Shown here: piece by piece, positions 26,746 through 32,637 of the stretch
Layout of the letters: every line of letters starts with the position of its first letter
How positions within the stretch are numbered: the stretch's first letter is position 1
The notes under the pieces: model-generated
Told to the model about the DNA's origin: nothing
The model's database searches: none
The model's input: the letters and a program-made list of their open reading frames with translations, nothing else
Source: Blastocladiella emersonii ATCC 22665
Lineage: Eukaryota > Fungi > Blastocladiomycota
Direction: 5' to 3'
DNA: 64,000 nucleotides
Assembly: GCA_025594325.1 (NCBI GenBank)
Contig: JANHCV010000004.1
Span: 1,860,001-1,924,000, forward strand
Made by a program: the position numbers and the translations under genes

Positions 26746-29610
26746 ATGGAAGCTGAGATCGAAGCACTTTCGGAGAGCATCAAGAAGCTCGAGCAGTTCG
26801 CCACGGGCAACGTGGCCAAGGCCAACAAGTGGGAGCTCGGCCGGCTGGCGTGCCGGGCGGCCAAGGAGTTTCTGGCCGCCATCAAGAAGTTGCCGTCCGA
26901 CAAAGGCGGTCCCACGCTGAGCCGTTCGGTGCACGCGCTTCGCCATGTTGTCGACGCAGCGACCGCGACGTTTGCCTTCAAATGGATCGCAAGGATGCAC
27001 CGCTCGGCGAATCCTTTGTCAAGCAGGTCGCGGGCATTCGGAGCCACATCAACACGCTGCAGTCGTTCCTCGAGTCCATCATCGCCATCGGGAGCGATCT
27101 CGTCGAGCTCGGCTGCTTGTCCAAGGCGGCGCTCAAGCAGGCGGTCGACGGCCAGCGGGACGCCCTCGCGAACGACGAGTCCTTGGCCATGTCCGAGCTC
27201 AACGGCATCTTCACCAAACACACCATCCCGCAGCTCACGCGCGCTTTAGATGGACTCGGCGCTGATGTCGTCGCCGAAGCCGTGATCGCGCTCTCCGCCC
27301 AAGTTCGCGCTCTCGAGTCGGCCAGCAGTCCGATCGACCAGCGCGCTCGTGACGCGGCCGAGCGGCTGCTGAACGTGCTTCGCACGAAGCCCGGCTTGTG
27401 GGACGCGGCCAACGCGCTCATCGCTGCCGCGCTTTCGGCCCCGCTTGTCACAAGTTTTGACTACATGGTCCCGGCCAATCGGCAGCCGGGTCAGTGGTCG
27501 ACCGCGACGCGCGCCGCGCAGGGTTTCGAGGTCTCGATCAAGTCCATTGCCTGCTCCGCGAGCGACACGGCAGCAGCTCGCCAGCGCGCGGCCGTACTCG
27601 CTTCCACGTGGGCTCAACCGGGCCACCTTGACCACGTCGCGACGCTCGTCGGGATCGCGCCGTTCGCTTCGCCGCCGTTTCTCGTGTTCTCAACGACCAT
27701 CCAGCCGACCAGCTTCTCGGCCTTCGTCGAGCAGCGTCCGGAACGCCATCTCGAGCTGCTGTGCGACGTTGCAACGGGGCTCGCTAACTTGCACGCGCAC
27801 GACGTCGTTCACGGCTGCCTCCGCACAAGCGAGATCCTCATCACCTCGTCCAGTGCTGCGGCCTTGTTCCCGACCGCCGTCGAGCGAGCTCTTGCGGGAA
27901 CGTACGGCGTGACGCTCGACACGGACGTCCCGTTCCTCGCTCCAGAACTGCTGGCCAAGCCGGCCACTGCGCCGACCACCGCGTCCGACGTGTTCGCGTT
28001 TGGCATGATCGCCCTCGAGATCTTGGGCGGCGCGCGTCCCGCTCCTGGCCAGCCTTCCGTCCAGCCGACTTCCTCACCCACCTGCTCGGCAGCGCTCTGG
28101 AACATGATCAGCGCGGGCTGGACCGCTGATCCGGCCCGCCGCCCGGCCATGGCCAACCTCGTGGCCCAGCTTCGCGTCCTTGCTCGCGCTGCGGCCGCCG
28201 CCGGGACTCCAACGCCCATCGTCGCGGCTCCGCCTCATGCAACAGCTCCGGCGTCAGTCGCTCCCCTTCCCGCGGCAGCCCCAACGCCAGTTGTGATCGC
28301 TCCGCTACCTGTGCCTGCTCCGCTGCCTAGTGTGATCGCTCCTCCACCTGCGCCAGCCCCAACGCCCGTCGTTAGCGCTCCGACACCTGCACTGCCCGCT
28401 CCTGCGCCAGTCTCAGCAAACCACACTGGCGGTACCAATTCGGCCGGCATGAACAGCCGGAAGCGGACTCACGATGATCCCAGCAACGAGCCTGTCGGGA
28501 AACGTCCTCGGACGATTCGTCCGGCCGCTGCGCCGCGGCCACCCGCACCTGCACCTGCACCCGTCCCGGCCGGGCCGCAGTCATGGCTCTCGTACCTCAC
28601 CGGAAGTCTGTTTCGGTTTGCTGCGGGGCTCTTCGGCATGACCGATCCATTCGAGGTGCGTGACTTTGCCACGCAGCCATCGCGCTGCACTCGAACTGAC
28701 CACAAACTCATCCTACCGCCAGGGCTTCCCGCGACCGACTCAAGCTGGCGACATGATCATCTGGTCCGCGCGCAACGAGATTGCGCGCGGGTCGACGTCG
28801 ACGCTGCAGATCAAGGACAAGCTGCTCACCGAGGCCGGCGTAGCGATCCTCGGCCGCGCCATGGGTTCGCGTCGTCAGGCTCTGACCGAGTTGTGCCTCA
28901 AGCGCGTCGGCCTCGACCTCAAGACACTGCTTGTGCTCTTCCCCGTGCTCGGTACGAGCTCGCTCACCACGCTTACCATCGACGCTTCGGTCCATCTCGA
29001 TTTGGCGAGCGCCGAGTTCGTGGCCACAAGTTTGCCGCGCTCGCTGACTTCGCTGTGCCTCGTCAACCTGCGCCTTGATCGGCCTGCCCTTGAGCCGTTC
29101 CTTGCCAACTTACCGTCTGATCTGCAAGTCCTCTCACTTGAAAAAATTTCCATCGGCGACGCGGGAGCTCGCATCCTCGCGCAGTACATGTCGCCGAAGC
29201 TCACGTCGCTGTCCGTGTACCGGCGCGGGATCACGAGCGAGGGTTTCACGTCCCTGGTCCCGCTACTTCCTTGTGGTCTCAAGGTTCTCGACATGCGCGA
29301 CAACCACCTCGACAAAACGGCCATCGAAAAGCTCTTCCCGCTGCTTCCCGCGTCTCTCACTCACCTCTACGTCGGCAGAATGAAGCTCGGCCGCGACGGC
29401 GCGATGCAGGTGGCCCTCTCCTTACCGAAACAGATCGAGACGCTTGATCTCAGCTCGTGCGGCCTGGACGAGTCAAGCGCTGGTTTCGTGGTGCAAATTC
29501 TGTGCGGTTCTGGGTCCAGCCTCAAGCGACTTGATCTGTCGGGTCACGAGTTCTCGGCCGACTTGAAGGCCAGGTTTGATCAGCTGGAGCAGATGAGGAT
29601 CGCTTGTTAA
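26746..29610 (+). CDS. Helical-bundle + pseudokinase + Pro-rich linker + LRR protein, copy 1 (apparent 1-nt frameshift near 26980; intron 28656-28722)
   Basis: Kinase-fold motifs 'VSIKSI', 'LLCDVATGLANLHAHDVVHGCL', 'FLAPELL', 'SDVFAFG', 'RRPAM'. RNI-like LRRs such as 'LKVLDMRDNHL'. Collinear with copy 2. Confidence 0.8.
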
Positions 29611-29995: not shown

Positions 29996-32637
29996 ATGAA
30001 TTCTGAACTGGAAGCGCTCGCCGAGAGCACCAAGCGACTCGAGTCCCACGTTTGCGGCGATACTGCGCCGGGTGGAAGCTGGCAGCTCGGCCAGCTGGCG
30101 CTGAAAACTGCACAGACCTACCTGGATGCTGCTCGCCAGCTTCCCGCCGAGACTCTTGCGAAAGATGTGCTCAAGCTTCAACATGCAGCGCGTGCGCTTG
30201 GGGCTGCTCTCGATATGGCGACTGCGAGATTTGACCTCATGACCTTGCGCCCGGATCAGGTTGTGATCAGGCAAATTGTTGGTCTCGGAGGTCATCTCAG
30301 GACCTTGAACTCCGTCGTCGATACTATCATCACCATCGGCCGGGAACTCGTCGAAATCGGCTGCCCAGCATCCATTTTGGAGCAAGTACTCGCGGAGCAG
30401 CAAACTGCTCGCGACGCTGACAGAATGCAGGCCAAGACTTTGCTCATTCAATGCTCGAAGCTCGGCGAGGGTCAGTTTCGCAAACTCCTTGACGAGATGG
30501 AGGCCGACGTCGCGGCCGAGGCCGTGATCGCACTTCGGCACACCGCTCAGGCGCCTGCGGCCGAGGCCGAGTCTGTCGAGGGCCTCGCACGTTCAGCAGC
30601 ACTACATGTTCTCAGTATTGTTCGTTCGGGCGCGGCTGACGCGATTCTTGCTGCGGCGCCATCGACACCTTTGACCACGTCGCTCAACTTTCATCTTCCA
30701 GGAAATCTTGTCGATCCAACGGAGCCTCGTCAGCCGGGCAAGTGGACGATTGGGACACAGCTCGCGCTTGGTACCAAAGTCTCGATCAAGACCGTTGCTT
30801 GTACCCGTCGCGACGCGTCAATCGCTCGAGAGCGCGCAGCAGTGCTTTCTGCTGCATGGACGCGACTCGGGTATCTCGACGGGGTCGCGCCGCTCCTTGG
30901 TGTGGCACCCTTTGCATCGCCGCCGTTCCTGGTGCTTTCCGTCTTTCATCCGACTCGATTCTTGACATTTGTCGCGCAACGCCCGGAAAAGCAGCTCGGG
31001 CTCCTGCGCGACGTGGCGACGGGTCTCGCGAACCTTCACTTTCACGGCATTGTTCACGGCTACCTTTGTCCGACGGAGATTCTGCTGACAACTACCGGTT
31101 CCGCGGTGCTGTTCCCGACGGCTATCGAGCGCGCGCTCACGGGCACGAGTGGCACCTTGACGGACGATGACCTGCCCTACACAGCGCCCGAACTTCTTGA
31201 CGCGCCGGAAGCTGCTCGGACTGCCGCGTCGGACGTGTTTGCGTACGGTATTCTCGCGTACGAGGTCATGGCCGGAGCCTTGCCTGCTCGTGGTCACCAG
31301 CCTGTTCAACCGACATTCTCGCCCAACTACTCGGCCACGCTCTGGAACGTCATCAGTGGGTGCTGGAATGTCGATGCGGCGCTACGCCCAAACATGGCCA
31401 GCATCGCGACCCAGCTTCGTATCTTCGCCATGGCTGCGGTGCCTGGCGGTACAGCTGTGGGATCGAAGCGGCGCCGCGATCCGGACGAGTCGGACGCGGA
31501 GCAGTCACTCAAGCGGCTCAAGCGCGAACCAGTGCCGCCTCGTGTATATCTTGGTCCGGTTTTCGTTTCGCGCCAACCTGAGCCGGTGCCCGTGCCCGTG
31601 TCAGCGTCAGTTCAACAGCCCTGGGCCGCTTACCTTCGCGGTCGGCTCTTTCGATTTGCTTGCGGGCTCGTCGGCATGAACGATCACTTCGAGGTATCCC
31701 CGCAGTCGCGATTGTGCGCGTTGTCGTCGCTGAACTAACTCTCCAGCCGTCTTAGAACTTCTCGCGGCCGCATCAGAGCGGGGATTTGGCCATTTGGTAT
31801 GCACGCGACGATCTTGCTCGTGGGCTTCTCACGTCGCTGCGCGTCAAGGGCATGGTCGTCACCGTTGCTGGCATCGGGATTCTCGGCCGTGCGATGGAGT
31901 CGCGGAGCCAAGCGCTCACAACTCTACGGCTCGAACGCGTCGGCCTCAATGTTCAGGCCTTCCTCGCGCTGGTGCAGGTGATCGGCGGGACTTCCTTGAC
32001 CTCGCTTATAATCGAGGACGCGGCGGTCGCTCTCAACCGCGCGGATGCTGAGTACTTTGCCAGGCGGCTCCCGCCCACGCTCACCTCGCTGGCCCTCAGC
32101 AACATGCACTTTGAGTCAGCTGGGTTCGCGCTCTTCGTGGTCAACTTTCCGCCTCGCCTCGAAAACCTCACCATCAACCAGATTCTGATGGGTGATGATG
32201 GAGCTCGCGCTCTCGCACAGCACATGTCGCGGAAGCTCACTTCGCTCTCCGTGCATCAGTGCGGGATCACGGACGAGGGCTTTGCGGCGCTCGTGCCGCG
32301 GCTTCCCGCGACGCTCCAGTCGCTTGACCTCGGCGGGAACCTGATCACTCGGGCCGGGATCCAGCATTGCTTCAAGCAAATTCCCTCACCTCGTGGTCGT
32401 GGCCTCATAGGCTGGCTGAATCTCGGCAAGGCCAACGGCGCCGTGACAGCGAACTGGCTTCCCAAGTCTCTCGAGGTGCTCAAGCTCGGCTCGTGCGGGT
32501 TCAACGAGGCGGACGCCAAGGTCATTGTGACGGTTCTCAAGCGGGCCGCGCCTGGGCTCAAGCGGCTCGATCTCTCGGGTAACGGGTTGGACGTCGAGCG
32601 GGCTCCTCGCGCGGATGGGCTTGAGATTGTGCTGTGA
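29996..32637 (+). CDS. Helical-bundle + pseudokinase + LRR protein, copy 2; intron 31694-31755
   Basis: 'VSIKTV', 'LLRDVATGLANLHFHGIVHGYL', 'YTAPELL', 'SDVFAYG', 'LRPNM'. LRRs such as 'LQSLDLGGNLI'. Same intron position as copy 1 (FE|xFxRP). Confidence 0.85.

What the first reader, a model, noticed from the sequence alone, without database searches (positions are those of the whole stretch)
26746..32637. Tandem MLKL-like helical bundle + pseudokinase + LRR genes: candidate fungal sensor-executioner immune module
Seen: two diverged tandem paralogs, each with a ~200-aa helical N-terminus, a kinase fold keeping the VAIK Lys (VSIK), APE and subdomain IX/XI but lacking the catalytic Asp (HRD becomes HGC/HGY) and DFG (LFPT), then a linker and RNI-type LRRs. 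Established: animal MLKL is a four-helix bundle + brace + pseudokinase with the Lys kept, HRD changed to HGK and DFG to GFE. By eye, copy 2 'LQHAARALGAALDMATARFDL' and 'EQQTARDADR' resemble the recalled MLKL helix 3 ('AMNRFKAALEEANGEIEKF') and brace ('EDQQDADEDR'). Inference: a single-chain receptor in which an LRR sensor controls a membrane-disrupting bundle through a pseudokinase switch. I am not aware of this architecture being described in zoosporic fungi.
Basis: partly seen in the sequence, partly recalled or inferred. Interest (0 to 1): 0.82.

Follow-up and report, generated by a model that had tools for sequence, protein, structure and literature searches.

The report
Helical bundle–dead kinase–LRR gene pair
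Two neighbouring genes of the water mould-like fungus Blastocladiella emersonii encode proteins made of a helical bundle, an inactive kinase and a leucine-rich-repeat domain; the bundle is predicted to look like the cell-killing domain of animal MLKL, but kinship and a killing function are not shown.

Summary
The observed architecture is real. Window 26746-32637 (Blastocladiella emersonii ATCC 22665) holds two same-strand paralogs, 47% identical. Each has about 235 aa of all-helical N-domain, a kinase domain without the catalytic Asp, the catalytic-loop Asn and the DFG Asp, a linker, one 62-67 nt intron, and about 11 RNI-type LRRs.

Copy 2 is intact (859 aa). Copy 1 carries a genuine frameshift at codon 79.

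The family has only four loci, all on one contig of this species: two intact and two decayed. An exhaustive search of 1.84 billion proteins found no N-domain relative elsewhere.

The MLKL reading is partly supported.
- Against: both values lie near the noise for helical bundles. Pfam sees no HeLo, MLKL or RPW8 domain. The first helix is acidic, with no membrane propensity. The kinase domain is not MLKL-specific.

I found no paper describing a bundle-pseudokinase-LRR chain. Function remains inferred, and no RNA data could be obtained.

The parts
26746..26979 (+). Copy 1, first 78 codons (helices 1-3 of the N-domain), in frame 1.
   Evidence: ORF list and translation. It is 81.7% identical over g1X residues 1-339, which include this stretch, to paralog 3. 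dN/dS is 0.22.
26982..26992 (+). Copy 1 break: an 11-nt segment that shifts the frame. It aligns to a 12-nt GT..AG segment holding an in-frame TAG in paralog 3. Copy 2 and P0005 lack it.
   Evidence: DNA alignment and protein alignment spacing. The sequence is reproduced by contigs of three DNA runs.
26993..27476 (+). Copy 1, rest of the helical N-domain, in frame 3.
27477..28190 (+). Copy 1 pseudokinase domain (VSIK, HGC, FPT, APE).
   Evidence: Pfam PF07714, E 8.9e-16; alignment.
28191..28655 (+). Copy 1 Pro/Ala-rich linker, with a basic NLS-like stretch and a hydrophobic helix (WLSYLTGSLFRFAAGLFGM).
   Evidence: The tail is 65% identical to copy 2.
28656..28722 (+). Copy 1 intron, 67 nt, GT..AG.
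   Evidence: Sequence. The deposited gene model P0001 uses the same junction.
28723..29610 (+). Copy 1 RNI-type LRR exon, including the stop codon.
   Evidence: Pfam LRR_1/LRR_6; 44% identical to the copy 2 LRR.
29996..30466 (+). Copy 2 residues 1-157: predicted four-helix bundle plus a long fifth helix. This is the part that superposes on the MLKL N-terminal domain.
   Evidence: AF2 model m35ab298cdb3b; VIA-align.
30467..30700 (+). Copy 2 residues 158-235: four more helices, including the conserved ADVxAEAVIAL motif, then the PLxT linker into the kinase.
30701..31435 (+). Copy 2 pseudokinase domain (VSIK, HGY, E in place of the catalytic-loop Asn, FPT in place of DFG, APE). It is the most conserved domain of the family.
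   Evidence: Pfam PF07714, E 1.1e-14; alignments to solved kinases; per-domain identity.
31436..31693 (+). Copy 2 linker, with the KRRR...KRLKR basic motif and a hydrophobic helix.
31694..31755 (+). Copy 2 intron, 62 nt, GT..AG. Read through, it gives a stop at 31736-31738.
31756..32637 (+). Copy 2 RNI-type LRR exon, including the stop codon.
   Evidence: Pfam LRR_6, E 1.9e-11. The paralog's LRR is modelled at pLDDT above 90 and matches ribonuclease inhibitor, NOD2 and NLRP3.

Best explanation
These are two tandem members of a four-locus family found only in Blastocladiella emersonii. Copy 2 is intact; copy 1 is recently broken.

Shown:
- The family encodes cytosolic single-chain proteins with three modules.
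- Module 1 is an N-terminal all-helical domain. Its first ~157 residues are predicted to form a four-helix bundle plus a brace-like helix.
- Module 2 is a kinase-fold domain that cannot catalyse by the canonical mechanism.
- Module 3 is an RNI/NLR-type LRR horseshoe.

Inferred: the protein works as a ligand- or partner-gated switch. The LRR binds something, the pseudokinase relays the change, and the helical bundle is the output. That output is most plausibly self-association, and possibly membrane attack as in MLKL or plant CC-NLR domains. In effect this is NLR logic with a pseudokinase in place of the NOD module. Resemblance to MLKL holds at the level of predicted fold and domain order. Family membership is not established.
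For: - Architecture and dead catalytic motifs are seen in all four paralogs.
- The N-domain model has pLDDT 77.8 and pTM 0.73. The separately predicted paralog P0005 gives the same helix pattern.
- 6ux8_A (MLKL N-domain) ranks 2 of 48,161 chains in the unbiased search, 4btf_A (mouse MLKL) ranks 10, and the Rx CC domain ranks 29.
- AFDB cluster hits with TM 0.39-0.56 include N-terminal regions of three proteins the library names as protein kinases or kinase-like.
- The four-paralog profile has the NRC4 CC domain (residues 22-128) as its best PDB sequence hit, at E 0.0056 and 0.0021.
- Purifying selection acts on the N-domain and on the N-terminal part of the kinase domain (dN/dS 0.22-0.27, copy 1 against paralog 3).
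- Two intact ORFs of 859 and 851 aa exist. The family shows birth-and-death turnover and is confined to one lineage.
- HeLo-like domains fused to kinases or pseudokinases are already reported in fungi (PMC12881547).
Against: - Foldseek against PDB, Swiss-Prot and the ESM Atlas gives no meaningful match.
- Pfam finds no HeLo, HELL, RPW8 or MLKL hit.
- The NRC4 hit is marginal and disappears with the three-paralog profile, where a designed helical repeat reaches E 0.015.
- Helix 1 is acidic. No N-domain segment reaches transmembrane hydrophobicity, and the net charge is about zero.
- The N-domain is the least conserved module, at 23-37% identity.
- Copies 1 and 2 carry an NLS-like basic motif.
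- AF2 could not fold the kinase domain (pLDDT below 50), so no bundle-kinase interface could be examined.
- There is no expression evidence.
Confidence: 0.4

Rival explanations
1. A non-lethal signalling scaffold. The helical N-domain is a generic dimerisation or adaptor bundle. The pseudokinase and LRR are protein-binding platforms in an ordinary pathway, possibly nuclear or cytoskeletal. The likeness to MLKL is convergent or trivial.
For: - THATCH, HHM and talin bundles match as well as MLKL does.
- No sequence-family signal was found.
- Helix 1 is acidic and there is no membrane-prone segment.
- Copies 1 and 2 have a bipartite NLS-like motif.
- The pseudokinase, not the bundle, is the most conserved module.
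Against: - MLKL is the only match that covers a whole solved domain from residue 1, and it occurs in the same position before a pseudokinase.
- The best profile hit is a cell-death CC domain.
- The family is lineage-restricted, fast-evolving and decays by birth and death, which is unusual for core signalling scaffolds.
Confidence: 0.4
2. A decaying, functionless lineage-specific family. The long ORFs survive only because stop codons are rare in 65% G+C DNA.
For: - Two of the four loci are broken. Copy 1 has a frameshift. Paralog 3 has an in-frame TAG, a 2-nt deletion and no LRR.
- Copy 2 has no deposited protein record.
- No RNA run was listed.
Against: - dN/dS is 0.22-0.27, even between the two broken copies.
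- Copy 2 and P0005 keep full-length 859 and 851 aa frames and conserved intron junctions.
- The same degenerate motifs (HGx, FPT, APE, RxxGxW, AEAxIAL) persist at 32-47% identity.
Confidence: 0.1
3. An atypical but active kinase receptor. The LRR regulates real phosphotransfer carried out with displaced catalytic residues.
For: The beta3 Lys, APE and the C-lobe motifs are kept. Precedents exist for kinases that are active despite unusual motifs (my own knowledge: WNK, CASK).
Against: The catalytic Asp, the catalytic-loop Asn and the DFG Asp are all replaced, by Y/C/N, by E/Q and by P, in every paralog. The glycine loop is degenerate.
Confidence: 0.05

Closest known systems
Animal MLKL (four-helix bundle + brace + pseudokinase)
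   Same: - Domain order is a helical bundle and then a pseudokinase.
- The predicted bundle superposes on the human MLKL N-domain over 147 of 152 residues, rmsd 3.2 A.
- The beta3 Lys is kept while the HRD and DFG aspartates are lost.
   Different: - No detectable sequence homology in either domain.
- The N-domain is about 55 aa longer, with four extra helices.
- There is a C-terminal RNI-type LRR that MLKL lacks.
- No basic patch and no membrane-prone helix.
- No known upstream kinase.
Fungal HeLo / HeLo-like (HELL) / basidiomycete MLKL_NTD domains, including HELL-kinase proteins
   Same: - Fungal proteins with a four-helix-bundle death domain. Some are fused to kinase or pseudokinase domains (PMC12881547; PMC9815663).
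- AFDB cluster matches include N-termini of kinase-annotated proteins.
   Different: - No match to the Pfam HeLo or Helo_like_N models.
- These domains rely on an N-terminal helix with transmembrane propensity (PMC10197012), which is absent here.
- They are described in Dikarya, partnered with NLRs or amyloid motifs, not with LRRs.
Plant CC-NLRs (NRC4, Rx, ZAR1) and animal NLRs
   Same: - An N-terminal helical bundle plus a C-terminal LRR sensor in one chain.
- The best profile hit is the NRC4 CC domain.
- The LRR resembles NOD2 and NLRP LRRs.
   Different: - The central module is a pseudokinase, not an NB-ARC or NACHT ATPase.
- Plant NLR LRRs are not of the RNI type (my own knowledge).
- The NRC4 hit is marginal.
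Plant MLKLs (AtMLKL1-3, Pm13)
   Different: The C-terminal part here is an LRR horseshoe. No sequence homology was detected.

Membership tests
MLKL family | N-terminal four-helix bundle plus brace helices. | tested here: inconclusive
MLKL family | Sequence homology of the N-domain to MLKL, HeLo, HeLo-like or RPW8 profiles. | tested here: not met
   Pfam at E up to 10 gives none of these families. PDB sequence searches never return MLKL.
MLKL family | A pseudokinase directly after the bundle, with the beta3 Lys kept and HRD and DFG degenerate. | tested here: met
   VSIK/VAVK, HGY/HGC/HGN and FPT in place of DFG.
MLKL family | Kinase domain closest to MLKL among known kinases. | tested here: not met
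   The best solved matches are RTKC8, Myt1, PknB and CSK. MLKL is not in the best 60.
MLKL family | Membrane permeabilisation and cell death after activation. | not testable with these tools
   This needs expression and liposome assays.
HeLo / HeLo-like (HELL) | An N-terminal helix with transmembrane propensity. | tested here: not met
   Helix 1 has a mean Kyte-Doolittle value of -0.58 to +0.19 and is acidic. The highest 19-aa window in the N-domain is 1.09-1.45. The feature is taken from PMC10197012.
NLR / STAND receptors | A central NACHT or NB-ARC NTPase domain. | tested here: not met
   Pfam finds only kinase and LRR families.
Plant CC-NLR CC domain (Rx_N type) | Sequence or profile similarity to a CC domain. 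| tested here: inconclusive
   NRC4 residues 22-128 are the best hit, at E 0.0056 and 0.0021, with four-paralog profiles. The hit is absent with the three-paralog profile and with single sequences. No Pfam Rx_N hit.
RNI-type (ribonuclease-inhibitor-like) LRR | Repeats of 26-29 aa forming a horseshoe, with LRR_6 matches. | tested here: met
   LRR_6, E 1.9e-11. About 11 beta strands at pLDDT above 90. Top Foldseek hits are ribonuclease inhibitor, NOD2 and NLRP3, at E 6e-9 to 1e-7.
Active eukaryotic protein kinases | Catalytic Asp (HRD), catalytic-loop Asn and DFG Asp. | tested here: not met
   All three are replaced in all four paralogs.

The most novel reading that the evidence does not exclude
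A NOD-less, single-chain innate immune or self/non-self receptor in a zoosporic fungus. An NLR-type LRR senses a ligand, a pseudokinase acts as the conformational switch, and an MLKL/CC-type four-helix bundle executes membrane attack. This would place the four-helix-bundle death fold in Blastocladiomycota and show a third way, besides RIPK3-MLKL and NLR resistosomes, of wiring it to a sensor.
Probability: 0.25. Interest if true: 0.8.

Novelty: new variant of a known kind. Interest (0 to 1): 0.55.

Why it matters
Four-helix-bundle executioner domains link cell death in animals (MLKL), plants (CC and RPW8 NLRs, plant MLKLs) and Dikarya (HeLo, HELL). Their history in early-diverging fungi is unknown.

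A bundle-pseudokinase-LRR chain would join sensor, switch and executioner in one polypeptide without a NOD module. That would make the idea of a pseudokinase as a conformational switch directly testable in a simple system. It would also extend the distribution of such domains to Blastocladiomycota.

If the bundle proves to be a generic adaptor, the family is still an example of a young, fast-turning-over pseudokinase-LRR family. Interest would then be modest.

Tried and rejected
- Genome-contig scan: that collection holds only bacteria and archaea, so it found nothing and was a wasted scan.
- RNA evidence: no RNA run was listed. The four runs found are DNA contigs of one sample. Introns, expression and the fate of the 11-nt segment in mRNA stay untested.
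- Full-length AF2 model of P0005: the kinase domain came out at pLDDT below 50. Bundle-kinase and LRR-kinase packing could therefore not be compared with full-length MLKL.
- Foldseek against PDB, Swiss-Prot and the ESM Atlas, and the language-model atlas searches, gave only noise for the N-domain.
- A canonical micro-intron that would rescue copy 1: rejected. The only GT..AG pair around the break spans 24 nt and does not change the frame.
- The deposited model of copy 1 (P0001) skips helix 3 and the Pro-rich linker through predicted introns. I regard the first as an annotation work-around for the frameshift and the second as unresolved.
- Profile-profile comparison with MLKL, HeLo or Rx_N alignments: not possible. 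No tool supplied those sequences, and I did not type any from memory.
- dN/dS on the LRRs of copy 1 against copy 2: not attempted, because synonymous sites are saturated at 45% protein identity.
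Full report
**Source and gene models**

The window comes from Blastocladiella emersonii ATCC 22665, contig JANHCV010000004.1 of GCA_025594325.1. The deposited protein H9P43_004434 (P0001) is a model of copy 1, and the paralogs lie on the same 2.5-Mb contig. G+C is 54-72% across 20000-40000.

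Reading the ORFs and splice sites gives these models:
- Copy 1: 26746-26979, then a frame break, then 26982/26993-28655, an intron at 28656-28722 (GT..AG, 67 nt), and 28723-29610.
- Copy 2: 29996-31693, an intron at 31694-31755 (GT..AG, 62 nt, with a CTAAC-like branch site), and 31756-32637. This gives 859 aa with no defect.

Unspliced, copy 2 would stop at 31738. After splicing, the LRR frame is conserved between the copies (44% identity). The deposited model of copy 1 uses the same junction...DPFE|GFPRP.... The two proteins are 47% identical over 835 aligned positions. A tblastn search finds no third copy in the window.

- Pfam gives PK_Tyr_Ser-Thr (E 1.1e-14 and 8.9e-16) and LRR_6, LRR_1 and LRR_4.
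- Alignments to active kinases and the family alignment show the following.
  - The beta3 Lys is kept (VSIK in copies 1 and 2, VAVK in P0005, Q in the decayed paralog 3).
  - HRD is replaced by HGY, HGC or HGN.
  - The catalytic-loop Asn is replaced by E or Q.
  - DFG is replaced by P-T-(A/S) within (L/I)FPT.
  - APE and the SDVFAFG and RP motifs are kept.
  - The glycine loop is reduced to a conserved R-x-x-G-x-W.
- Canonical catalysis is therefore very unlikely. Nucleotide binding is not excluded.
- The LRR of paralog P0005 is modelled at pLDDT above 90, with about 11 strands. Its best Foldseek matches are ribonuclease inhibitor, NOD2 and NLRP3 (E 6e-9 to 1e-7). 'RNI-type' is correct.

**Copy 1 is broken**

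- Frame 1 is conserved up to ...ATATFAF(K), and frame 3 from DAPLGES onward.
- Logan contigs of three DNA runs of the same sample cover 26775-27081 with no difference and no gap. The shift is in the DNA and is not an assembly slip.
- The 11 nt at 26982-26992 align to a 12-nt segment in paralog 3, GTAGATCGCCAG at L001 6409-6420. That segment carries an in-frame TAG.
- Copy 2 and P0005 lack the segment. Without it, all four paralogs have the same 10-residue spacing at this point.
- No canonical short intron can rescue copy 1.

**Family census**

- An exhaustive HMMER search with an N-domain profile against 1.84 billion representative proteins found only two proteins, both from this genome. They are P0002 (H9P43_004456) and P0005 (H9P43_004303, 851 aa, E 3.4e-9).
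- P0005 has the same three-domain architecture and one 62-nt intron, placed about eight codons upstream of the intron position in copies 1 and 2.
- Paralog 3 (L001 6173-7514) has the in-frame TAG, a 2-nt deletion in the kinase domain and no LRR. It is a pseudogene.
- Word-indexed searches with the exon-1 protein and with a full-length profile returned only generic, mostly bacterial, kinases beyond these paralogs.
- Copy 2 was never returned as a database protein, so it appears to be unannotated.
- Between copy 1 and paralog 3, dS is 0.31-0.41 and dN/dS is 0.22-0.27 on both sides of the break and into the kinase domain. The lineage was under purifying selection for most of its history, so the defects are recent.
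- Per-domain identity among the copies is highest in the pseudokinase (40-57%), intermediate in the LRR (32-45%) and lowest in the bundle (23-37%).

**Is the N-domain MLKL-like?**

*Sequence level.* Pfam at E up to 10 gives no HeLo, Helo_like_N, RPW8, Rx_N or MLKL family for any paralog. Single-sequence searches of solved structures give noise. Language-model atlas searches give noise.

A profile of all four paralogs does have the CC domain of the plant helper NLR NRC4 as its best solved-structure hit:
- It aligns NRC4 residues 22-128 (9cc8_A) to profile positions 14-114.
- E is 0.0056 with the full N-domain profile and 0.0021 with a profile cut to the bundle.
- The hit is absent with the three-paralog profile, where a designed helical repeat reaches E 0.015.
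- Coiled-coil and designed helical proteins follow at E 0.01-0.02.

It is therefore a lead just above the noise.

*Structure level.* With a five-row alignment, AF2 gives an all-helical model (pLDDT 77.8, pTM 0.73). Its helices are 2-19, 30-47, 58-82, 86-120, 125-154, 158-166, 170-184, 194-208 and 210-220. The P0005 model reproduces the pattern.

| Search | Result |
|---|---|
| Foldseek, PDB | No significant hit |
| Foldseek, Swiss-Prot models | No significant hit |
| Shape search, ESM Atlas | TM at or below 0.39 |
| Foldseek, AFDB clusters | TM 0.39-0.56 to N-terminal regions of several proteins, three of them named as protein kinases or kinase-like, and TM 0.33-0.38 to plant U-box proteins |

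*Features that argue against a HeLo- or MLKL-like membrane mechanism:*
- Helix 1 is acidic and amphipathic (MNSELEALAESTKRLESHV; MEAEIEALSESIKKLEQFA).
- No N-domain window reaches transmembrane hydrophobicity.
- Net charge is about zero. HeLo and HELL activity depends on an N-terminal helix with transmembrane propensity (PMC10197012).
- Copies 1 and 2 carry a bipartite NLS-like motif in the linker.

*The kinase domain.* It is not specifically MLKL-like. The best solved matches are RTKC8, Myt1, PknB and CSK. AF2 could not fold the kinase domain of P0005 (pLDDT below 50), so inter-domain packing could not be examined.

**Literature**

HeLo-like domains fused to kinase or pseudokinase domains are already noted in fungi (PMC12881547). 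MLKL_NTD-like domains are abundant in Basidiomycota (PMC9815663). Fungal NLRs mostly use WD40 or TPR repeats rather than LRRs (PMC10197012). In three full-text searches I found no description of a bundle-pseudokinase-LRR chain, nor of such proteins in Blastocladiomycota.

**Verdict**

- The architecture is real and unusual: a helical bundle, a dead kinase and an NLR-type LRR in one cytosolic chain. It occurs in a young, species-restricted family that is turning over by birth and death.
- 'Works like MLKL or a CC-NLR' is a reasonable hypothesis at about 40%.
- 'Is a member of the MLKL or HeLo family' is not established. Two defining features failed when tested: sequence-profile membership and a membrane-prone N-terminal helix.
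- A generic scaffold role is about equally likely.
It is not independent evidence.

Noticed in passing
window 26982-26992; L001 6409-6420: Two different defects fall inside one 11-12-nt segment that only copy 1 and paralog 3 possess: a 1-nt loss in copy 1 and an in-frame TAG in paralog 3. In paralog 3 the segment is GT..AG-bounded (GTAGATCGCCAG). Flanking codons show dN/dS of 0.22-0.27. It may be the remnant of a collapsed intron. Whether it reaches the mRNA is untested.
   Followed up: partly
It resembles the 12-nt GT..AG segment in paralog 3. Together they hint at very short intron-like inserts in this genome.
   Followed up: no
window 29996-32637: Copy 2, the only intact copy in the window, was never returned as a protein by three database searches that did return its paralogs. 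It seems to be unannotated in the public assembly.
   Followed up: partly
window 33035-33460 and onward; L002 3348-4497: Hva1_TUDOR small genes sit next to a pseudokinase-LRR gene at two separate loci (this window and the P0005 locus). This suggests the genes were duplicated together as a block.
   Followed up: no
window 31436-31693 and 28191-28655: The linkers of copies 1 and 2 share a bipartite basic motif (KRRR...KRLKR and SRKR...KRPR) and a hydrophobic helix (W..YL.G.LFRFA.GL.GM) just before the intron. P0005 keeps only ...FFAGFE. In the P0005 model this stretch forms short helices in front of the first LRR strand, so it may be an LRR cap.
   Followed up: partly
window 28185-28590: The deposited model of copy 1 (P0001) splices out the whole Pro/Ala-rich linker as an in-frame intron. 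Without RNA data it is unclear whether this stretch is coding.
   Followed up: no
window 22484-26302: Directly upstream lies a 1272-aa ORF that reads as a self-sufficient cytochrome P450 fused to a reductase domain. It is on the same strand and ends 444 nt before copy 1.
   Followed up: no
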